Shown here: one piece after another, positions 49,396 through 62,479 of the stretch
Layout: each line of letters opens with the position of its first letter
How positions within the stretch are numbered: the first letter of the stretch is position 1
NCBI GenBank assembly: GCA_976226885.1
Contig: OZ320322.1
Location: 65,038,001-65,102,000 of the forward strand
From: Iphione sp. A-MEVVRFRX5
Lineage: Eukaryota
Length of the DNA: 64,000 bases
Reading direction: 5' to 3'
Notes under the pieces: generated by a model
The model's input: the letters and a program-made list of their open reading frames with translations, nothing else
The model's database searches: none
Told to the model about the DNA's origin: nothing
Program-made: the position numbers and the translations under genes

Positions 49396-50701
49396 CATGG
49401 TTCCCAGCCCATCAGGGAAATCAGGGAAAATTATTTTACTCTTTTCCAGTCAGGGAAAAATCAGGGAATTTGATAAAAATGCCTCATATCAGGGAAAAAT
49501 CAGGGAATTTGATTGACCCAAAAGTCAATCATACTTATACTTTGTTGTACATCAAAACAACATCCATTGTATGATTGCCTATGGTGGTTTTTTTAGTGTA
49601 GCTTGTTTGACCGTAGTACAAGTAGTTGAAGTGCCGTATCTAAATAAGGCCTTTAACTTTAAACATGATTGTGTACAGTAAAATACCAAAAGAGAGTAGT
49701 GCCCTTGTCTCCAGAGCTGGTTCTCCTTACACACCATGATGGGGAACTGTACATTGTGGCCCAGACAATAGACATACCACCTTGAACTCTATGCCCAGAC
49801 TGAAGCCTTGGTGTTTTAAGAGAAGACTGCCCCTGAGTGGAATAAAATTATTGACATATTCAAAGCTGCAACTATCAATATTCACAGAGTTCCACTCAAT
49901 CTGGGCTTCATTAAATATAAATCTCTCAAAAAAGTTCTGCAATTTGACTTTGACACTAAATAGTATTTTAGTAACTTTCAGTTACCCTTGATTTAAATAT
50001 CATTTGAAAGCTCATCTATCCCCCTTTACTTGTTCAAGTTTGAGGATTATGAGTTAGTGTTTCAACATAGTTTGGACATACTGTTCACACAGGCTATTTC
50101 ATAACAGAGGTTGATTCAGTTTAATCCTATGAAGCATTGTAGCCATCATTTTCAAATTTGAGATAGGCTTGTGACATCACGAAGTACTATAAAACAATAT
50201 GTCTATGTACAGAATTTTGCTGATATCCTCATTTTTCTCTGTTCGAAATTTTATGTATTAATAATGGTTCTAAATGCCAAGAGACTTAAGTAATTTTTTG
50301 TATCATTGTAACTGCAGTTGTGCTAATTAAACCCTCTACATCATGTAGATCTTCATGTCTTCACACATTCCAATGTAATCCAGTATTGAAATTGGTACCT
50401 TCAACATAGTGTGCTGTGATTCATTGATGTGAACTTGAATTACCTTGAATCAATCTCTTTCTGTATAAGGTGAGGAAAGGATTACTGTAAGGGGAGAAAG
50501 GAGGCCATTACATGCCTATGTAATAGTACAAATTTCTTTTACATGACAATGTTTTAAACTGCAAATAGTTCACTGCAACAACATAGAAAACATGAAACTA
50601 GAAATGAGTTGAAGTAAATATCATGGAATTTTGAGACTTCATCAGGGAAAAATCAGGAAAATATCAGGGAATTTTGTTTTTGTGAAATGCTGGGAACCCT
50701 G
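49396..50701. mobile_element. Non-autonomous DNA transposon, superfamily unassigned
   Basis: TIRs catggttcccagc / gctgggaaccctg (12 of 13 match), subterminal tcagggaaa repeats at both ends, ATCAT flanking both sides. Confidence 0.7.
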
Positions 50702-50826
50702 ATCATTTTGTATGTTTACATTTTGAAGTAAAAGTCATGTTCCAAGGGATATTCCTACTCAAGTCTGAAAAAGTAGTGTCCATTTAGAAAATCATTTAAA
50801 TGATGATATATTTTCACACACATATA

Positions 50827-51098
50827 AATTTTTAACAATTTAATATTCAACATACCGATCGATTTTTTAATTGCAAATGGTAATTCAATTTTTAACCAGT
50901 CACATTCAAAGTACATATTCACTGCTGATTGTTACTTGAAACTTCCTGGATACACCTAGCTACCGATGTTTGTTGTCATTTGAAACGTATCCCTGAAGAA
51001 GGGTGGATCACACCCAAAAGCTTGGAACTTAATATTTTGACTGTTCTCTGAATACAGAGATCGTTCTGAAACAGCGTGTTGGTTTTTATTTACTAAGA
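50827..51098 (+). repeat. PLE 5' pseudo-LTR
   Basis: Near-identical to 60415-60711 but lacks a ~25-nt TATA-containing segment. Confidence 0.93.
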
Positions 51099-51281
51099 TT
51101 CTTCTCAAACGACCAAACGCATCCCTCAGGATCCACTGTTTACGGAACAGCCCACCCCCAGACAGTGTTCGGCGGCCAAAACACAACAACCTGGCACTAA
51201 CGTGCAACACACACACCCCCGGGCATTCCACAGAATCCACTGTCATCAGGCCTAACAGCCATCCACAAGGGCACAACAATC

Positions 51282-53567
51282 ATGAACGATACCAGACAAC
51301 AGTCTAAAAGACCAAGGACCGAACCAGACGTTCCGAACCCAACACAACCAACAGGCAACACCACGACGCCCCATCCAAACATTACGTCACAAGACGGACA
51401 AAACAACGTCAACCAACCACCAAATGACGCACCCGCGAATACCGCCCAACCAACATACCAGAGCCTCAGTAGCGAGGCCATGATAATCTTCAAGACACTT
51501 AAAGAGGTCAAGAAGGGAATAGTCACTGCCAAACACCATGACTTATTCATGACAACACACCTGAACAATAACACAATCCCGAAGGGCCTACAACCAACAT
51601 TATCCGCACAGATTCCAGAAATTTTAACGCGCTTCCAGATACAGTGGGAAACCGCCCTAGCTGAATTAGGCTCCAAACTCACAAGACTCCTCAAAGTGTA
51701 TTGGGAAGAGAGAACACACGCACTCGAAACAGAATGCAACCACATAATAGACAGCTCCAAAACCCAAATAGGGGGAGAACAAACCAACAGAATCCTAGAA
51801 CTACTGGAACAGCACGAAACAACCCTCCGGCAAGAGCTGGAGAACCGCCGCACAAGAAAAACCGCCGCTTTGTCAAACTCCGACAGACCGGACCCCAACC
51901 AACAATAGTCTTCAACCTCTCAAACTACACCCTTAATGATGCCGAATTAAAGTTACTGAATAAAGGTCTTTCGTTCATTCCTGCCGTACACACACCACAC
52001 CCAGCACACGAACTAAGAGATTTCTATCTTTTCACACGTAGAATAAGATTACAACATCTTTTCCAAGACACTGACAAACCACTAGACAAATCTCCATTCC
52101 ATGAATTACAAGGTTCAAGTGGGTGGACCCCACAAGCCGGAAAAGACAAGTTTGTTGACTGCTACCTAACGACACTAGAAAGACACATACAACATACTAG
52201 ATTACACAAACCCAAATCAAACATCACTTCCGAAGAACTCAGTGCACTTAGGACACTTGCAAACAACCCCGACATAGTAATTAAATCCGCAGACAAAGGC
52301 GGTGCTGTCGTAATTCAAAATTCAACGCAATATGAAACCGAAGCCATATGGCAACTTTCAGATCAGAACCACTATGAAATTGTTGACACTGACCCAACAA
52401 ACCTGTATCAAGAATCAATCAAGAAATTTGTAACAGATTGTATCGCATCAGGCTTTTTACCATCAGAAGCTAAATGCCTCATCACCAAGAATTTCAAAAC
52501 TCCTAACATCTACTTCCTTCCAAAAATTCATAAAGCAAACAACCCAGGTCGCCCTATTGTAGCCGCTTGTGATTCCCCCACTGAAAAAATCTCAGCATAC
52601 GTCGATCGCATTTTGGTGCCCTTTGTCAAACAATTACCTAGCTACATCAAAGACACAAAACACTTCATCCGCACTATTCAGAACATCCCAATTAACAATT
52701 CAGACTTCCTAGTAACAATAGACGTGTCATCTCTCTACACCAACATTCTGCACAAAGACGGCATTTTGGCCGCAAGAGGATACCTACTAACCAGACGAGA
52801 TGACACCCCACACACTTGGTTGTTACTACGACTAATTCACTTCATCCTAACTTGCAACAGCTTCAAATTCAACAACAGACATTACCACCAGAAACAAGGC
52901 ACTGCAATGGGCACCAAAATGGCGCCAAACTATGCGAACCTTTTCATGGGGGCCCTTGAATCAAAACTACTGGCAAATGCACCGAGCAAACCACTAACAT
53001 GGCTAAGGTATATCGACGATATCTTTATGATCTATAGAGGCACAGAAGCAGCACTCATACAATTCATCAACTGCCTGAATGCCCAACATCCAACAATATC
53101 AAATTCACTCACGAATACAGCCAAGAGAAAATCTCCTTCCTAGACACAACAGTATACAAACTCAATGGAAAGTTGGCCACAACATTGTACACAAAACCGA
53201 CAGACGCACACATCTACCTACACTACAACAGCTACCATCCAAAACACCAGAAAACCTCGATCCCGTACAGCCAACTACTACGCATACGATCCATTTGCAC
53301 TGAATTACAACAATACGAGCAACACGCAACCAACATGATCACATACTTCGCCAATCGTGGCTATCCAAAGAAACTACTACTACAAACATACAGAACAGTA
53401 AGAAACACTCCACGCACTGACCTGTTGACTGACACCGATCACACCCCACAAAAAATCATCCCCTATGTCAAATCCTATCACCAACCTTCTCAACATGAAT
53501 TCTCACTCGCACTCAAACACGCACACAACATCCTGACACAATCGCACAGCAATGACGAATTCCTTAA
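51282..53567 (+). pseudogene. PLE polyprotein, N-terminal and RT part (2 frameshifts)
   Basis: IPKGL N-domain; VFNLS, KSADKGGAVV, LPKIHK, GRPIV, DVSSLYTNI, GTAMG, WLRYIDDIF, SFLD, LYTKPTD, HPKHQK. Frameshifts near 51895 and 53100. Confidence 0.92.
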
Positions 53568-54289
53568 CCCTATACTGGCCACCACAACCGGCCGGATCGC
53601 AGTGTGTGTGTGTCATGTAGTGATGTATTTTGTCTCTAATTGCAAAACAACAATGTGTATGACCATGATTTTTGTAGTTTTGGAAAGTAGACATAGAGGA
53701 CAAGACGCTAGGATAAATTTTTAGTTGAAATGTGGAATATGAAATATTTAAAAATTAAATTTATGAGCGGATCTCTTGGTATTTTCTTGCCCGAAAAAAA
53801 CAGTATTTCATCTTTGCATGTAAAAATCAAGCAGAACTGTTGATCAAAGAGGTGAAGTGTAATCGTACGAAATGTTACTATTTTTATTTGCTTTGCAATG
53901 ATATATGGCATGTGTATCTACATGGACTATACTGAAAGTTAATGTGTGTTAAATGAACAAATGTCATTTTGCCGAAATGAAACACCAGGTGTCCCTGACA
54001 GTTGACGCGTGAATGATCCGTTCGGGGCGCCAGCAACTCCAGAAATTATGTAGATTTATGCTAAAATGCATTACGAAAAATTTCAAGAAATAGCAAAAAC
54101 ATAAAGATAACAATGAAATTAAATGTTATTGACTTTGTAAAATAAGAATCAAATGAATGTTATTGTGCTGATTGAAAAAAAGTAGCAAAGGTGAAGTGGT
54201 AACGTCACGTCATAAACCGCCGGTTTCCACAACGATCGGACACATACTCAAGTAGTTCTGAGAAAAGGGAAATAAATCAACCAAGGAAG

Positions 54290-55452
54290 ATGCAATCGAT
54301 GATCAAAGCTTTCCAGGAGAAAGGGTAAGTGTTGAGGCATACATATATTGCATTTAAATGCATTTGATATATCATTATTGTGCTTTCTTTTGGCATATTG
54401 TAGTGGGCACCTTGAAATATGAAAAAATGGCGGCGTGACGTGTTGAAAACGTGGTCCTGCATAAAGCCGGGCAACCGTGCCCATGCAATAAGCAGGATGA
54501 GTGAAATGAAACAATGATTTTAATAATAAGATGCAGTTGAAGAAGTTTTTATTGTCGCCAATAACCGACATGTACTATAGTGTTCTGACTTGAATATGCA
54601 CTCATCCTCTGTAACATAACCGAATGTTACGAAATTTTACCTGAAAAAGATGATTGACTGTTCACTTCTAATCCAGGTTAGAGCCACCCCATGGACTCAT
54701 AAATTTGATCGAACTATCAAAGTCACGCAGGGATGTCTATAGGCGCCTGTGGGCAGCCGCCAAGGTAAATCATATATATGTACACATAGGCATATTCAGA
54801 CAAATAGGCATACTCACATTAATATGCAACAATGTATATTGCCATTCTCATTTTTTCCCTTATAATATGGCAGGTCAAAAACATGGTAAAAAAGACACGT
54901 TAATACGAAAGCAAGCAAGATGTATGCTGTACATCACACTTGATAGAACCATGTTTCCCATCATCCTGATTAAATGGAAGTATGTACATGGCATAAAGAG
55001 TGATTTTGTTCCTATCTTATGTATAATACATATCAATGTCGTTCAATGTTGTGCCTCTGGATGTTACATTGCCACCTGTGTTCTCATTTCTCCAATAGTT
55101 CGGCGCAGGTCTTGGTGCAGAGTTTGCTACGTACGTGTTTCCTGCAGCTGTAAGGGACGCAGTGAGAGAGCATCACCCTGAAACACCCAAAGGAGCATAT
55201 GATGAGCAGTACGATGGACGTGGCGATGTATGTGTTCATTGAAATTTGCATGTCTATGTTTATTTGCAGTAATGCACGTGCCGTAATGATCCTGCAACAC
55301 ATGTGTTGAAATTCAAGCAACCTGACAATACTTGAATATTACTTGTTGCTGTATGATTTTTACATAAATTGTGTCTGCTTATATTGTAGGTCTATTACGT
55401 TTCACTGGACGAAATGTGCATCCTGCCATATCCAAAAATAAAGAAGCAGTGA
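54290..55452 (+). CDS. Candidate second, 4-exon gene inside piggyBac (~102 aa)
   Basis: Exons 54290-54323, 54682-54764, 55099-55227, 55390-55452; donors gtaagt/gtaaat/gtatgt; phase-consistent open frame. Confidence 0.5.
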
Positions 55453-55605
55453 ATCCAACCATGCAGTGCAGCAGATGGGAACAGCGACATAAGTCTACAA
55501 GGTCGTTTACATAGATGAAGCAGAGGAATTTTGGTTGTATGGTAATAATATTTGTAAAATGCCTGGAAACCTGAAATAAAAAGTTTTTCATTTACATGTA
55601 CCTTT

Positions 55606-58560
55606 TCAGTGTGCCTTTCCTTGAGGGTATCTGTGCTTGTCGAATTCAGCAGAGTGCCATGTGGGAAAGCAGTTGCGGCGTTTATTCAGACATAGGTGCA
55701 CTTGGCATTGGCTGTCGGCGCAGGTGATGTAGCTCTTTACTTGCTTGCCGTACAAGGTGTAACACACCTGGCAATTCCTTCTGAACTTAGACACATGAGG
55801 GTCATGTGGGCCTGTGAGGTTCATACTCTTCTTCCTCTTCAGGGCTGGAACATAGATTGGAGGGTACTCATCATCCCAGATCTTTGCAAGTTGCCTCACA
55901 AGTTCTTCCCGGAAATCCAGGTGTGTGTATCTTGCGCAGCGGGCGAGGCCAGGGAAATCAGGATGACTCTCTTTCCACGTCTTGAACAGTATATAGCTGT
56001 TCAGTACTGCCTGATCTATCATGTGGAAAAAGAGAGTTTTCCACTAACGGCGGACCTTAGTGAGGCAATTATAAGTCTCGATCATTTGGTCCGCCAAGTC
56101 CACGCCACCCATGAACTTGTTATATGCATGGATGCAAGATAGCTTCCTGGCGACTGTGGGTGTGTACTGTCCTGCTTTGTTCCTCCCACGGCGCACAACA
56201 AGGATGTGGTCATGTCCCCTGTGTGCTGTGCTAATCATTGTGACGGGCTTCTTATCACACCATTGGAGAAAGAGAATTCCGTCTTCCCTGGTGAAACGCA
56301 TGTCTCCTTCCTTCGCAGTTTTCGCCCACTCTTTTCCTTTGAGAATCTGAGGAAACGAAAACAAGAGACTCATGTCAGTGGTTACTTTAGGGAGGTAGAA
56401 GTAGAGGGCAGGACAGAATAATAATATCATGACACATTGTCAGTGAATCCATCTGCAAATATTACTGCATGTCACTTACTGCAGGGAATCCTTTCCTCCA
56501 AGGCTGCAGAGTGCCACACATTGCTGTACCCTCTTGGAGTAGGTCCTTTGCTAGTTGGTACGAACTGAAGTAATTGTCACAATGGACGACATGACCACGG
56601 TGCTTGTATGGCTCCACCAGATTCATCACCACGTCATATCCTAAACCTTTGCCACTGCGCTCGGTGCTTTTTCCCACATACACACTGAAAGATCAGAACG
56701 GATTGATTGAGAAAAAATGGATATGCAGTCACAGTTGATTTTTTTTTTGTCACAGTAAAAATTTTTGTGAGTCTACAATGCAGCATTGTATGTGGTGTGC
56801 CCAGTTGCAGCTAACTATAATATCATACTTCATCCTATTGACATCTTATTATTCCACCCGATGATATAAATTAACCATAACACAATGATGTACTCACTTG
56901 AAGTTGAATGTGTATCCTGTTTCTGCATCGCATATACACCAGAGCTTATAACCAAAGCGGCATGGTTTGTCTGGCATATATTGACGCACAGGGGATCGCC
57001 CCTTTGATCTGACCATCCTCTCATCAATTGATAATGTTTTTCGTGGATGGAACAGAGCAGTGCAGGCAGCTTTCATATGGTTCAGCATTGGCCTTATTTT
57101 AGCCAACTTGTCGGACGGGTCTTCCTCACCTGGTTTACTGACTTGCAACATGGCACTGAGTGCCTTGAATCTGTAAAGATATAAGACAATTTTTAAGAAT
57201 CATTATTTATGCATCATTACATACTTCCATATGAAAAATTTCTCAGAAGCTCATGCAACCAAGTCTTAACCATCAGCTCCTTGCCATGATATTGATTCAA
57301 TTTAATATTTCCCAATATAGAACACCTATATATTCTGAATGCACTGCTCACCTGTTCCTGGATAGGAAACGTCTGGCCCACCCGCCAGAATATAGAGTTT
57401 CTTGGGACCAGGTCCTGTCAATATCCTTCCTTCCACAAAATCCATTGTAGATGGTTAGAGCAATATAGTGTTTCAATTCAGCCAGGCACATCTCATCCCA
57501 CGCACCGTCTCTTCGCCTAGCATAGCTAGGTTTATCATGGATGTTCATCCAAGCATACAAGTTTGTATTTGTCACTATCGTCTGAAAATAATGACAAACA
57601 GAAGATGCAATCCACGTAAAACTCATCAGTTATCACATTGGGACATCCACAGCACTAGCAATATTTTATTGAAGTTCCCCAATACATGCCTACACGAAGT
57701 CCCACGTTGTTCACCCGACTTTGATATGGCTGTGTACTGATCGGTTCTTTTCTCATCTCATTTTGCATTTATTAGGACTATAATAAATCTGTTTGGAAAA
57801 TATCACACACACCTCCAAGAACTCATCGGGCAAGAACAATTCAAAGAAGTCGATAGCTCGTGTGAAGTTGTTCATGCCCAAACGTGTTATTCTCTCCGCT
57901 AGATGGGGACCGGGTACTTGTGAGGGCCTGTATTTAACTACAGGTGGCTCCACGTCCTCGTCATCAAACGACAGGAATCTACAATAAATCAACACCCCTA
58001 AACATTTTTTCGGCATTTTTTGTATGTATCGGTCAGAGAACATCTCACAACAATCAAAATTAAGCTTAAATAACATTATATATGTTTATAATCAACAAAA
58101 CCTAACAGCTACATATGACGTTATGTGACGTCAATGTTGTTGTCAACAAACGTATCGGCAGACGACAAACCAATGGTTTTCCCATCTGCCAGAGAAGCCC
58201 AGATAGGTATGTCTTCAATAACCACTTCAGTCCCTAAATGAAATGATTGCTTACATAATGTATATTTCGGATTTCATTTTAGTGTATTTTGGCCCATTGT
58301 AGATATATTTTTGTATAAAAAAGGTTAACTTACGTGACGTTCTTCCTATTGCCACTACCGCTGCCATCACCCATGCCAACTTCACCGTCCAAACACCTAT
58401 TGAATTCTTGATATCTTGCTGCCTGAATTTCAAGATTCAGTTCATCTTCTTCTTGTTCACTCAATCCTGGTGATCCTATTTGATCTATTACCTCCACATT
58501 ATAGCCTTTTGCTATTAATTCCCTTGCTTCCAACGCAGCTTTACGCTTGGGGCGTGACAT
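55606..58560 (-). pseudogene. piggyBac (PGBD4-like) transposase, 6 exons, one premature TAG
   Basis: Exons 58334-58560, 57813-57978, 57352-57581, 56898-57170, 56480-56684, 55606-56346. DDD motifs SIDE, CDNYF, GGVD; C-terminal Cys-rich domain; TAG at 56044-46 in KVRR*WKTLFF. Confidence 0.92.
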
Positions 58561-58781
58561 TATGGCGTCAGGCAATGAACAGGCAACACAGTGCGGGATT
58601 GATGTAATATCTTTTATTTTATTTTTTTTCAATGAACCAGGCTTTTCTTTTGTTTGGCAGTTAATAGAACACCTCCATTAATTTCACCCTTGATCGCATT
58701 TTAAAACAATGATTTTTCGCTATGTATAATGCATCATCCAGATACGGATGATTCAGCATTGCGCGGCCAGTATAGGGTTAA

Positions 58782-59279
58782 ATACAACATACTGCAGGCA
58801 CACAAGAGAGGGAGAAATCTGAGAGAGACATTGACACGAGCCGAGTATCCGAAACCAGAACCAAAAAACGGCACTCACCCATGCAACAAACCACGCTGCC
58901 GTACCTGCCCCAGAATAATCCAAACATCCTATGTTCACTCCTCTGACCAAACACGTAAGTTCCGCACTGTGGGATATGCCGACTGCCAGACATGTGACGT
59001 TGTGTATTGCATCCACTGCAAGAAATGTAAAAAAATGTACGTTGGCCAGACAAGCAACTCCATCCACAGACGTCTAACGCAACATCTAAATGACGTTACC
59101 AACATGCGCGAACTCAAGCCGGTTGGCCTACATTTCAACGCCAACTGCCAGTCAAGTGACGTCACAATACAACACCTCAACACTGTGCACGTGACCTCAA
59201 CCAACGTCTCCGATTGGAGGAGGCATGGATTAGCATCCTTAGAACGTACCGCCCACTTGGTATGAACATACGCGAGTGA
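58782..59279 (+). pseudogene. PLE Cys-linker and GIY-YIG endonuclease (1 frameshift)
   Basis: KRGRNLRETL, PCNKPRCRTC, VVYCIHCKKCKKMYVGQT; after a shift near 59190 the frame reads RLRLEEAWISILRTYRPLGMNIRE*. Confidence 0.92.
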
Positions 59280-59320
59280 ACCAGTTGAAGAATTGTACGC
59301 ACCGCTGCAATTAAGCAATA

Positions 59321-60325
59321 ATGGCTAGCAATCAACCATCCATCTCGACTGCAAAAGACCTGCCCGTCTTCCAGTGTACCATATGCGCGAAGACATACAA
59401 CAGACTAAAGGCAGTCAAGAAACACATCACTATGGAGCATGAAGACTCTACGAATAAACGCCACGAATGCCCATTCTGCGATCACATCTACAAAACTAAA
59501 TCGTCTTTGCTACGGCATGTCAAGCAAAGCCATGGGACAATGAACACTCTACATCCGTCCCAAATATCCGTCCCGGTTCCTTGGAAAGGTACGATTGAAT
59601 CAACCACATGCCCCAAGGGGTCATCTGCCAGCTTGAACCAGCCCAGAGACCCACGCTTACACAACCGCCAAGTACCGCCGATAAACTATGAGGACGAGGA
59701 AGAAGTAGCGACCCACAACCTGCTTGAGCTGATGGGCCGACTAGACGAAGCCACAACAACCCAAGACAACACCACGTGCAACAGTGTCAACAAACCGAGC
59801 GTGCTGCCAGTAGTCAACAAGACCGTCCCCGCCCCAAACCACCACTCGACGTCAATCAAGAGGCCGTCAACACCAGAGAGGGCCCCTGCAGCAGCCACAC
59901 ATCCGTCAGTCGCCCTTGTTCCGACGCCCGTGCGGGCTCCAACCAGCCGCCAACCCTCGAAGTTCCCACGTACGCTGTCCTTTGTGAGTTCCTCCGGTTC
60001 AACCATAACAACCACCAGTGCTGATTCAATTAACACCAATACTGATGTCTCGAGGGCACCGTCTACCAGCACACCAAAGTCTGCTACCAACGATGCCACA
60101 GCTACATTCACCCCTAACCTTGCGGCCAACGGTTTTAAGCCACCAACAGACATTGTTAATAACGGCCACGATGAGAGTCCTCACCCCACGCCGTATTCTA
60201 CTACACCGTATGGTTTGGATTCGGACATTTTAGCCTCTTGGTTGGTAATGACCCGTATAATGTCATCAGCCCTGGCTGATGACATCAAGTTACTGATTAA
60301 GTTGAAATTCGGACTTGACATTTAA
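59321..60325 (+). CDS. C2H2 zinc-finger ORF (334 aa) inside the PLE
   Basis: Two C2H2 fingers (CTIC..HITMEH; CPFC..HVKQSH), S/T/P-rich middle, helical C-terminus. Lies between the EN stop and the 3' repeat. Confidence 0.85.
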   Translation: MASNQPSISTAKDLPVFQCTICAKTYNRLKAVKKHITMEHEDSTNKRHECPFCDHIYKTKSSLLRHVKQSHGTMNTLHPSQISVPVPWKGTIESTTCPKGSSASLNQPRDPRLHNRQVPPINYEDEEEVATHNLLELMGRLDEATTTQDNTTCNSVNKPSVLPVVNKTVPAPNHHSTSIKRPSTPERAPAAATHPSVALVPTPVRAPTSRQPSKFPRTLSFVSSSGSTITTTSADSINTNTDVSRAPSTSTPKSATNDATATFTPNLAANGFKPPTDIVNNGHDESPHPTPYSTTPYGLDSDILASWLVMTRIMSSALADDIKLLIKLKFGLDI

Positions 60326-60414
60326 AATGCCCAACGGACAATGAGTAACAAACATCGTTTTTAACTGTGATATATCATATGTGTTTATTCCAGCACTCAC
60401 AAAGGACTATTTTG

Positions 60415-60711
60415 AATTTTTAACAATTTAATATTCAACATACCGATCGATTTTTTAATTGCAAATGGTAATTCAATTTTTAACCAGTCACATTCAAAGT
60501 ACATATTTACTGCTGATTGTTACTTGAAACTTCCTGGATACACCTAGCTACCGATGCCTATAAAAGGCAGCGCTTTGATTGTTTGTTGTCATTTGAACCG
60601 TATCCCTGAAGAAGGGTGGATCACACCCGAAAGCTTGGAACTTAATATTTTGACTGTTCTCTGAATACAAAGATCGTTCCGAAACAGCGTGTTGGTTTTT
60701 ATTTACTAAGA
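60415..60711 (+). repeat. PLE 3' pseudo-LTR
   Basis: Direct repeat of 50827-51098; includes cctataaaagg. Confidence 0.93.
60600..60641 (+). ncRNA. Minimal type I hammerhead ribozyme-like motif
   Basis: gtatcc-CTGAAGA-a-GGGTG gatca CACCC-GAAA-gctt-ggaac: core boxes, stem II and a palindromic AAGCTT in place of stem III. Confidence 0.6.
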
Positions 60712-62479
60712 CAATATACATCAATTAGCATCTTCATTATAATTTCTAAATATATGCATAAATGAAATGAATAATATATATTCCTAAAATCACAGTATGA
60801 TGAAATGAGACTTTTATGCCCAGAACTACTTTCAGGAAATGTTAGATATATTTATAATATATATATAGTGTATAAAACTACCACATGAAAAGCCTACCCT
60901 TTTGCAGTGGTTACTGCAGTTGTTGTACCTTGACCCTTGTTATATAAACATTTGACTTACTTTTGAGGCAGATTTCATTTGTAATTACACTACCTATATA
61001 AAACATTGCCTGAAAGTAGTATCGACCATGGGGAGGATGTCTCATCCAGGTGAGATTTGGAAAAAATTACTTTTACCATTTAGGTACATATTCACTTAAG
61101 ACACTGAAAAAAGGAGATATGTGCTTCCTAATTTGTCTTGTGCATGATTTAACTGAAATCAGAGAATTACACCAGACTATTTTTCAGTTAGACGTAAGGA
61201 TATGAGAGGGAGGCTCAGCAAAGTGTGTATGCATGCATGGCAGTCTGTACTTTGAGCCATGTCAGAACCTGGCCACCAACTGACTCGGCGACAGCTCCAT
61301 GTAACAATAACTACACCACACGTAGGTTCTTCTTGTCAGGCCTTTATTGCAGAGCACAGCACAGGTTTCATAGTCGTTCACAAGTGAGTCCCTCTAGAGG
61401 TGTACAACTCCTTACTGATATACACGTTAGTGATGTAAACACTTTATCATAGGTATGCGAAACTCGTATAATCTCAACGGATGTCCTGCAGACAGTACAA
61501 GATTGACTACCCATTGTGTTAGTTCCGACCAGGGGTAGGATCGAATGTTCATTAATGACTACCATGCGTAAATCCTAATCGTCACCTCATTACTAAGATA
61601 AGGAATGGATGTGTACAACTACATGGTGTCACATACGCCAAGAAAAATTTTCAATTGTGTCTTAGTTAAAAGGCCATTCTTACAACTTATATCCATACAC
61701 TTTACGTACACAGTACGCCTGCATACATTTTCTTACTACAAATAGTACTGTGTTACATCCACGTGGCCGCACACTTGATTGGCTCCGTGTGTGTGTGTGC
61801 ATGTGTGTGAGTGCAAGTGCTGAAGGTGCTTGTAAAATATAAAACTGCTATGTACTATCACTTTTCCTTGAGCATAGACTTTTCTATGTGGATTCTTATA
61901 TTCAATGGAGGTCATATCAGCGATGTCAATGCCTGGTGTGTAGCGGATGATCTGATTTCCATTAAGGAGCCGGGTGTGGAGTGTTGGAGGTGGGAGGAGC
62001 CTATTCTTTAATGTCTGAGCCGGCTCCTTGCCTGTTACATCAGTTTTTGCTATGACAGGAAGGCCTATGGAGAATCCTATGTTAAACTGAGAAACGTGTT
62101 CACTTTGATGTTTGAGGGCTGACTGGGAGGGAATGACCCCCCTGGCTGCTCAGAGCTGGAGGGAAGCAGGTGGCAGTGTCAATCACCCTGTACTGATGGC
62201 TATCTGTCTTCCCCAACCTCTAACAGACCCCTGTAGCCAGGAAGCGCACCCTGGGCCGTCTTGGCCGTCACATGACCTCTCCTACCGGTGCTAGGTCGCC
62301 TCCCGCCGTGCTAGGCTGCATCCCGCAATGCTAGACCGCCCCCATCCACACTACCCTATTACATAACGTGGAGTAGTTCCCTGGGCTGCCTCAGCTGCCA
62401 CAGGACCTCTCCCAGCCGCCCCAGGCTGCTCTCCGCTGTGAGAAGTCCTCGCCCAGCACTACCAACACCCTCTGACTCC

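What the first reader, a model, noticed from the sequence alone, without database searches (positions are those of the whole stretch)
54290..55452. piggyBac carries a second, convergently transcribed spliced gene in its 3' arm
Seen: the 2 kb between the transposase stop and the TIR holds four + strand exon candidates that join in frame into ~102 aa: MQSMIKAFQEK-EPPHGLINLIELSKSRRDVYRRLWAAAK-FGAGLGAEFATYVFPAAVRDAVREHHPETPKGAYDEQYDGRGD-VYYVSLDEMCILPYPKIKKQ*. It ends ~150 nt from the transposase stop. Established: piggyBacs normally encode only a transposase. Inference from memory, unverified: the YRRLW..G.GLG....VFP..VR..+RE..P...G.Y pattern resembles the P2X7-intracellular-like domain seen in some transposon accessory ORFs. 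The exon 2 acceptor is ambiguous (CAG at 54674-76 vs TAG at 54679-81; only the latter is in phase).
Basis: partly seen in the sequence, partly recalled or inferred. Interest (0 to 1): 0.78.

Follow-up and report, generated by a model that had tools for sequence, protein, structure and literature searches.

The report
piggyBac copy with small second gene
A young piggyBac jumping gene, sitting inside another mobile element, probably carries next to its (here broken) transposase a small spliced gene whose protein resembles the tail of the KolX / P2X7 'ballast' domain; such genes were mentioned briefly in a 2022 paper, so this is a further example and not a new kind of thing.

Summary
The element is real: piggyBac 53568-58777, perfect 13-bp inverted ends, TTAA duplicated, inserted cleanly into a Penelope-like retroelement. 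Its six-exon transposase (minus strand) has one premature stop at 56044-46.

The four plus-strand exons exist and join in frame to 104 aa.

A spliced frame of this length is not beyond chance: 30% of simulated arms give one. Two other results support a gene:
- The exons are GC-rich and the introns AT-rich, as in the transposase (P about 0.0015).
- Exon 3 holds the conserved tail motif of KolX / P2X7 ballast, absent from 300 simulated windows.

Every exon-wise database test of that kinship was blank (Pfam, PDB, word search). The one hit of the large search is a local match to HMG boxes.

Kojima and Bao (2022) already reported cysteine-poor KolX-tail-like proteins in two non-animal piggyBac families. 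This scan has noted the same layout at least seven times on other DNA of this genome.

The joined product was neither searched nor folded. Verdict: probable new member of a known kind, of moderate interest.

The parts
53564..53567 (.). left TTAA target-site duplication
53568..53580 (+). left terminal inverted repeat CCCTATACTGGCC (the 3' end of the element relative to the transposase)
   Evidence: pair I8, 100% complementary, only two matches in the window
54290..54324 (+). accessory gene exon 1 (ATG, 11 codons plus GG, donor GTAAGT); weakly supported
   Evidence: donor 8 of 9
54677..54764 (+). accessory gene exon 2 (acceptor CAG 54674-76, donor GTAAAT); holds RRDVYRRLW, the part aligned by eye to R546-Y550 of P2X7
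55099..55227 (+). accessory gene exon 3 (43 aa, GC 0.53); holds the KolX / ballast tail motif PAAVRDAVREHHPETPKGAY
55390..55452 (+). accessory gene exon 4 (20 aa plus TGA); weakly supported, since a 3-exon form ending at 55243-45 is possible
55575..55580 (+). only AATAAA after the accessory stop, 26 nt before the transposase stop
55259..55264 (-). only canonical poly(A) signal downstream of the transposase stop; it lies in accessory intron 3, so the two mRNA tails would overlap by about 350 nt (inferred)
55606..56346 (-). transposase exon 6, with GGVD motif, Cys-rich C-terminal domain and TGA stop
56044..56046 (-). premature TAG at codon 468 (context VRR*WKTLFFH), which cuts off the last 145 residues including the Cys-rich domain
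56480..56684 (-). transposase exon 5
56898..57170 (-). transposase exon 4 (best Pfam DDE_Tnp_1_7 match, E 4.6e-23)
57352..57581 (-). transposase exon 3
57813..57978 (-). transposase exon 2
58334..58560 (-). transposase exon 1 (ATG at 58560; an in-frame ATG also lies at 58632)
58765..58777 (-). right terminal inverted repeat
58778..58781 (.). right TTAA target-site duplication

Best explanation
This is a recently inserted copy of an intron-bearing piggyBac family that carries two genes tail to tail.

The first is a six-exon transposase on the minus strand, killed in this copy by one nonsense codon. The second is a small four-exon gene on the plus strand for a 104-aa protein with a single cysteine. 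The core of that protein (end of exon 2 plus exon 3) is a remote relative of the C-terminal, guanine-nucleotide-binding end of the KolX / P2X7 'ballast' domain.

Inferred mechanism, none of it shown:
- The protein is made from its own promoter in the 722 nt between the left end and the ATG.
- It keeps the arginines that contact GDP in P2X7 but has no zinc site.
- It acts as a small nucleotide- or phosphate-binding helper that works with the transposase, as KolX is assumed to do in Kolobok, the other TTAA-targeting superfamily.
- The poly(A) signals are placed so that the two mRNAs overlap by about 350 nt at their 3' ends. This could couple or dampen their expression.
For: - Element anatomy: perfect TIRs and TTAA duplication.
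- Clean insertion: with the element and one TTAA removed, the host retroelement's frame stays open for 161 more codons.
- Transposase: Pfam DDE_Tnp_1_7 in four exon pieces; five GT-AG introns and 613 codons.
- Accessory model: canonical GT-AG sites with donor scores 8, 8 and 6 of 9 and pyrimidine-rich acceptors; no internal stop; only the model's frame is open in exons 2 and 3.
- Composition: exon/intron GC contrast like that of the transposase, P = 0.0015.
- Codon score: like the transposase CDS (0.014 against 0.009) and above the introns (-0.09 to -0.24).
- Tail motif: drawn from published conserved positions, found once in the window, in exon 3, and in none of 300 simulated windows.
- By-eye match of R546, Y550, I/V568, P570, R574, I577, R578, P582, G586 and Y588 to Fig. 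S6 of PMC9587614 and to the conserved positions listed in PMC7016195.
- Helix predicted over AAVRDAVREH, at low confidence.
Against:
- No other copy or species could be compared.
- A spliced frame of this length arises in 30% of simulated arms.
- The codon score is not significant per exon (P 0.1-0.2).
- Pfam found nothing in any exon even at E up to 10.
- PDB sequence search was blank for exons 2 and 3.
- The word search was blank.
- The full HMMER search with exon 3 found no KolX or P2X7 protein. Its one hit is a protein of eight HMG boxes.
- The motif was chosen after seeing the sequence and leaves out C572, which even the two published piggyBac proteins keep.
- The W after Y550 is 2 residues early, and the Y550-to-P570 spacing is 3 residues longer than in KolX.
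Confidence: 0.55

Rival explanations
1. The gene is real, but its product is an orphan small protein with no common descent from KolX / P2X7. The tail motif is convergent or a generic helix. One version of this reading: an HMG-box-helix-like DNA-binding peptide.
For: - All exon-wise homology tests for P2RX7_C / KolX were blank.
- The only database hit of exon 3 is to HMG-box repeats (VRDAxxxEHP; E 2e-8 summed over 5 stretches; 25 bits and 10 of 29 identical for one repeat).
- The product has 1 cysteine against 7 in the domain.
Against: - Pfam HMG_box does not match exon 3 even at E up to 10.
- The HMG match covers only helix 1, and nothing in exons 3-4 corresponds to helices 2 and 3.
- Eight to ten conserved ballast-tail positions line up in order, with the same spacing from P570 to P582.
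- Published precedent exists for exactly this kind of protein in piggyBacs.
Confidence: 0.2
2. There is no second gene. The exons are a chance spliced frame in the non-coding 3' arm, and the GC-rich patches are regulatory or transposase-binding sequence.
For: - 30% of simulated arms yield a frame of at least 104 aa with sites of equal quality, and the real arm allows a different 183-aa model.
- The arm has other GC-rich patches that are not in the model, at 53968-54040 and 54428-54490.
- The codon score is not significant.
Against: - GC peaks coincide with exons 2 and 3 and stop at their splice sites.
- The motif is absent from 19 Mb of simulated sequence.
- The literature offers a precedent.
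- As unchecked leads only: the scan's notes report the same layout in several other piggyBac copies of this genome.
Confidence: 0.17
3. The exons are a captured fragment of a host KolX-like / ZCD gene (transduplication). It is carried along passively and is without function for the element.
For: - Only the tail of the domain is present and the zinc cysteines are gone.
- ZCD / ballast-like genes are common in invertebrates (PMC7016195).
Against: - The fragment has its own ATG, intact frame, stop and poly(A) signal, and three clean introns.
- The same truncated, cysteine-poor form is reported from piggyBacs of a red alga and an oomycete. This argues for a retained module and against a one-off capture.
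Confidence: 0.08

Closest known systems
KolX-like second proteins of piggyBac-2_GrCh (red alga) and piggyBac-14_PI (oomycete), Kojima and Bao 2022, Mob DNA 13:24, Data S6
   Same: A second protein encoded by a piggyBac. [quoted passage not shown] The tail pattern is Y..(about 20)..P.C....[IV]R...P...G.Y.
   Different: - Those families are non-animal, their proteins are longer (about 115-175 aa), and both keep the cysteine after the proline (C572 position).
- Here the host is an animal, the gene has three introns, the product has 104 aa, and that cysteine is alanine.
- Orientation and splicing of the published ones are not stated in the text I could read.
KolX of the Kol0 lineage of Kolobok transposons
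   Same: An accessory protein of a TTAA-targeting DDE transposon. The conserved tail positions line up by eye.
   Different: KolX has the full ballast fold with 7 cysteines binding 2 zinc ions. Here only the last 55 or so positions are recognisable. The transposon superfamily also differs.
Cytoplasmic ballast domain of the P2X7 receptor (Pfam P2RX7_C; PDB 6U9V / 6U9W)
   Same: The positions equivalent to the GDP-contacting R546, R574 and R578 are present, as are Y550, P570, P582, G586 and Y588.
   Different: - No channel and no zinc site.
- H547 is R and K583 is E.
- No Pfam or PDB sequence match exon by exon.
HMG box (helix 1)
   Same: Local match AxFxxYxxxxxVRDAxxxEHP to repeats of an eight-HMG-box protein.
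   Different: One helix only. Pfam HMG_box is not matched, and there is no counterpart of helices 2 and 3.

Membership tests
piggyBac superfamily | TTAA target-site duplication | tested here: met
   TTAA at 53564-67 and 58778-81. The host frame is restored when the element and one TTAA are removed.
piggyBac superfamily | Short terminal inverted repeats beginning 5'-CCC and ending GGG-3' | tested here: met
   13-bp perfect TIR CCCTATACTGGCC.
piggyBac superfamily | DDE_Tnp_1_7 (PF13843) transposase with a Cys-rich C-terminal domain | tested here: met
   Four exon pieces match PF13843, E 2e-5 to 4.6e-23. The Cys-rich tail was read directly. The gene is broken by TAG at codon 468.
KolX / P2X7 ballast (Pfam P2RX7_C) | Significant match to the family profile | tested here: not met
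   No Pfam family for exons 2, 3 or 4 at E up to 10. The exons are short (29, 43 and 20 aa), the joined product was not searched, and no positive control could be run.
KolX / P2X7 ballast (Pfam P2RX7_C) | Seven conserved cysteines binding two zinc ions | tested here: not met
   One cysteine in 104 aa. No Cys-rich open stretch on the plus strand of the arm that would fit an N-terminal half.
KolX / P2X7 ballast (Pfam P2RX7_C) | Conserved C-terminal positions (R546, Y550, I/V568, P570, R578, F/Y581-P582, G586, Y588) | tested here: inconclusive
   All but F/Y581 are present, in order. The P570-to-P582 spacing is identical, judged by eye against Fig. S6 and PMC7016195. The motif has 1 match in the window and 0 in 300 simulations. 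However, the motif was set after seeing the sequence, and the spacing from Y550 to P570 differs by 3.
KolX / P2X7 ballast (Pfam P2RX7_C) | Ballast fold and guanine-nucleotide binding | not testable with these tools
   Only exon 3 could be folded by reference: pLDDT 64, with one helix over AAVRDAVREH. That is too weak for a fold search.
piggyBac-borne KolX-tail-like proteins (Kojima and Bao 2022) | Encoded inside a piggyBac, similar to the KolX C-terminal part, most of the 7 cysteines lost | tested here: inconclusive
   Location inside the element: met. Cysteine loss: met. Similarity: shown only by eye and by the motif.
HMG box | Match to PF00505 / three-helix L-shaped domain | tested here: not met
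   No Pfam hit at E up to 10. A single-repeat comparison gives 25 bits over 29 residues.

The most novel reading that the evidence does not exclude
Cysteine-free KolX-tail proteins are a functional module shared by the two TTAA-targeting transposon superfamilies (Kolobok and piggyBac) from algae and oomycetes to animals. On this reading, a minimal guanine-nucleotide-binding unit controls TTAA-specific cut-and-paste. It would also show what the P2X7 ballast did before the receptor captured it.
Probability: 0.1. Interest if true: 0.7.

Novelty: new member of a known kind. Interest (0 to 1): 0.33.

Why it matters
If the gene is real, this piggyBac family is a two-gene transposon, which is rare for the superfamily. 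Its helper would be related to the domain that became the 'ballast' of the vertebrate P2X7 receptor, whose nucleotide-binding role is still unexplained.

A 104-aa version without the zinc site would be a simple object for testing what the conserved tail does: GDP/GTP binding, or an effect on excision and integration.

The value of this particular copy is limited. Its transposase is dead, the phenomenon was published in one sentence in 2022, and the scan has already met it repeatedly in this genome.

Tried and rejected
Steps that gave nothing:
- Exon-wise homology was blank in every search: Pfam at E 1 and 10, PDB phmmer for exons 3 and 2, and the word search with exon 3.
- Attempts to reach related piggyBac loci through transposase pieces found nothing. 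This covers the word searches and the metagenome and viral contig scans. Exon 3 is too short for the search for related loci.
- No second copy of the element or of the exons lies in the window.
- Rfam, tRNA and bacterial promoter/terminator scans found nothing relevant.
- The codon-usage score has little power with this training set.
- Folding exon 3 alone gave pLDDT 64, so no fold search was run.

Readings rejected:
- The TAG acceptor at 54679-81 is out of phase.
- HMG-box membership fails.
- The open stretch at 54416-54514 ('RRDVLKTW'), an echo of exon 2 inside intron 1, has no in-phase splice sites.

Steps left out by rule:
- Any search, alignment or fold of the joined 104-aa product. Joining was done only inside scripts, to check frame, length, composition and codon score.
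- A computed alignment or profile against the KolX / P2X7 sequences of Fig. S6 and the two piggyBac proteins of Data S6 of PMC9587614.

Full report
**Anatomy**

Reading 50500-61500 and the inverted-repeat scan (pair I8) define a piggyBac element at 53568-58777, 5210 bp long. It has perfect 13-bp ends (CCCTATACTGGCC / GGCCAGTATAGGG), each flanked by TTAA. The end sequence occurs nowhere else in the window, and no other copy of the element lies in the window.

The element sits inside a Penelope-like retroelement. With the element and one TTAA removed, the retroelement's reading frame runs on for 161 more codons, from its reverse transcriptase towards the GIY-YIG part. This is therefore a clean, genuine TTAA insertion.

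**Transposase**

On the minus strand, ORF pieces match Pfam DDE_Tnp_1_7 in the order of the profile. A splice-site search, refined, gives six exons:
- 58560-58334
- 57978-57813
- 57581-57352
- 57170-56898
- 56684-56480
- 56346-55606

They are joined by five GT-AG introns of 133-355 nt, for 613 codons in all. There is a GGVD motif at residue 447 and a Cys-rich C-terminal domain.

A TAG at 56046-56044 (codon 468, context VRR*WKTLFFH, where piggyBac transposases usually have W) truncates the protein before its last 145 residues. This copy is therefore not autonomous. Its perfect ends and single lesion suggest it is young.

**The observation**

The four plus-strand exons exist at 54290-54324, 54677-54764, 55099-55227 and 55390-55452. 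All introns are GT-AG: GTAAGT...CCAG, GTAAAT...ATAG and GTATGT...GTAG. Joined, they give 315 nt with no internal stop, that is 104 aa plus TGA, with a single cysteine.

Exon 1 ends in phase 2, so the CAG at 54674-76 is in phase. It adds Gly-Leu at the junction. The TAG at 54679-81 leads to a stop.

The accessory stop lies 153 nt from the transposase stop.

**Is it more than chance?**

The join alone is not. An exhaustive search for ATG-to-stop frames with up to three introns and sites at least as good as the weakest observed ones finds at least 104 aa in 30% of 200 simulated arms. It also finds a 183-aa alternative in the real arm. A codon log-likelihood score places the model level with the transposase and above the introns, but it is not significant per exon.

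Two features do exceed chance:
- **Composition.** Exons 2 and 3 have GC 0.52-0.53 and the introns 0.33-0.37. The transposase shows the same contrast. Random placement of four segments of the same lengths in the arm reaches the pooled exon GC in 0.15% of trials.
- **Motif.** Exon 3 contains PAAVRDAVREHHPETPKGAY. A motif built from positions conserved in the published KolX / P2X7 alignment (P570, S/A571, I/V577, R578, P582, G586, Y588) matches once in all six frames of the window, here. It matches in none of 300 simulated 64-kb windows. The caveat is that I fixed the motif after seeing the sequence, and I left out the cysteine at 572.

**What the protein resembles**

The scan's earlier notes gave the lead 'KolX' and 'a 2022 paper'. 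I checked the paper.

Kojima and Bao (Mob DNA 2022, PMC9587614) show that KolX, the second protein of Kol0-lineage Kolobok transposons, is homologous to the P2X7 cytoplasmic ballast (residues 476-595). [quoted passage not shown] Data S6 lists two such proteins, from a red alga and an oomycete.

I compared by eye against their Fig. S6 and against the conserved positions listed by Rump et al. 2020 (PMC7016195). The end of exon 2 plus exon 3 lines up as follows:

| P2X7 position | Residue here |
|---|---|
| R546 | R |
| H547 | R |
| Y550 | Y |
| I568 | V |
| P570 | P |
| C572 | A |
| R574 | R |
| I577 | V |
| R578 | R |
| P582 | P |
| K583 | E |
| G586 | G |
| Y588 | Y |

The arginines that contact GDP in rat P2X7 are thus kept, and the zinc cysteines are not. 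The tryptophan after Y550 is two residues early. The Y550-P570 distance is three residues longer than in KolX.

**Tests of that kinship**

The joined product was not searched, aligned or folded.

- Pfam finds nothing in exons 2, 3 or 4, even at E 10.
- PDB sequence searches are blank.
- The word search with exon 3 has no candidates.
- The full HMMER search of 1.84 billion representatives with exon 3 returns one protein, P0001, made of eight HMG boxes. Its score is summed over five repeats. One repeat alone gives 25 bits with 10 of 29 identities over A.F..Y.....VRDA...EHP, and Pfam HMG_box does not match exon 3. I read this as a local helix-like similarity, not homology.
- AlphaFold on exon 3 alone gives pLDDT 64 with one helix over AAVRDAVREH. 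That is too weak for a fold search.

Kinship with KolX is thus plausible from ordered conserved positions and from the literature. It is not demonstrated here. By the family's own defining features (profile match, seven cysteines), this protein is not a full member.

**What could not be done**

- Attempts to reach related elements through transposase exon pieces all failed, because full-length relatives lie outside the length window of the word search.
- The cross-copy and cross-species conservation claimed in earlier notes of this scan therefore could not be reproduced. I do not count it as evidence.

**Mechanism (inferred)**

The gene has 722 nt of upstream sequence inside the element, an ATG in the context GGAAGATGC, and a single AATAAA at 55575-80.

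The only canonical signal for the transposase lies at 55264-55259, inside accessory intron 3. If both signals are used, the two mRNAs overlap tail to tail by about 350 nt. This could couple or restrain their expression.

I think the protein most likely acts as a small phosphate- or guanine-nucleotide-binding partner of the transposase, by analogy with KolX in the other TTAA-specific superfamily. I put the chance of nucleotide binding itself at about 0.3.

**Verdict**

This is probably a real second gene of a two-gene piggyBac: about 0.75 for the gene, about 0.55 for the gene together with KolX-tail ancestry. It is an animal, spliced and even more cysteine-depleted example of something reported briefly in 2022. 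The scan has already noted it at least seven times elsewhere in this genome. It is a new member of a known kind and of moderate interest.

Noticed in passing
window 50828-51100 and 60408-60700; 51282-53563 and 58782-59280: The host of the piggyBac is a Penelope-like retroelement with direct terminal repeats of about 270-290 nt (one 27-nt indel), read directly. The piggyBac splits its ORF between the reverse transcriptase and the Cys-rich / GIY-YIG part. The frame is continuous across the empty site.
   Followed up: partly
window 54202-08, 54435-41, 58125-31, 58334-40: GTGACGT (a CRE / ATF-like half site) occurs 18 times in the window against 6.9 expected, in none of 100 shuffles. Four of the sites lie in the 5.2-kb piggyBac. 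One is 85 nt upstream of the accessory ATG and one is in transposase intron 1.
   Followed up: no
window 54424-54434, in the GC-rich patch 54428-54490: AAAATGGCGGC, which from memory resembles a YY1 site, lies in the GC-richest 60 nt of the arm, inside the proposed intron 1. It could mark an internal promoter or an alternative first exon. A second GC-rich patch at 53968-54040 is also outside the model.
   Followed up: no
window 55099-55227 versus P0001: Exon 3 shares A.F..Y.....VRDA...EHP with helix 1 of the HMG boxes of an eight-box protein. This is probably a chance or generic helix similarity.
   Followed up: yes
window 54416-54514: An open stretch in intron 1 reads ..KKWRRDVLKTW.., echoing RRDVYRRLW of exon 2, with different codons. 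No in-phase splice sites were found.
   Followed up: partly
window 54782-54816: An 18-bp unit is repeated 1.9 times in accessory intron 2.
   Followed up: no
ARAGORN and Rfam find nothing of the kind in this element.
   Followed up: yes
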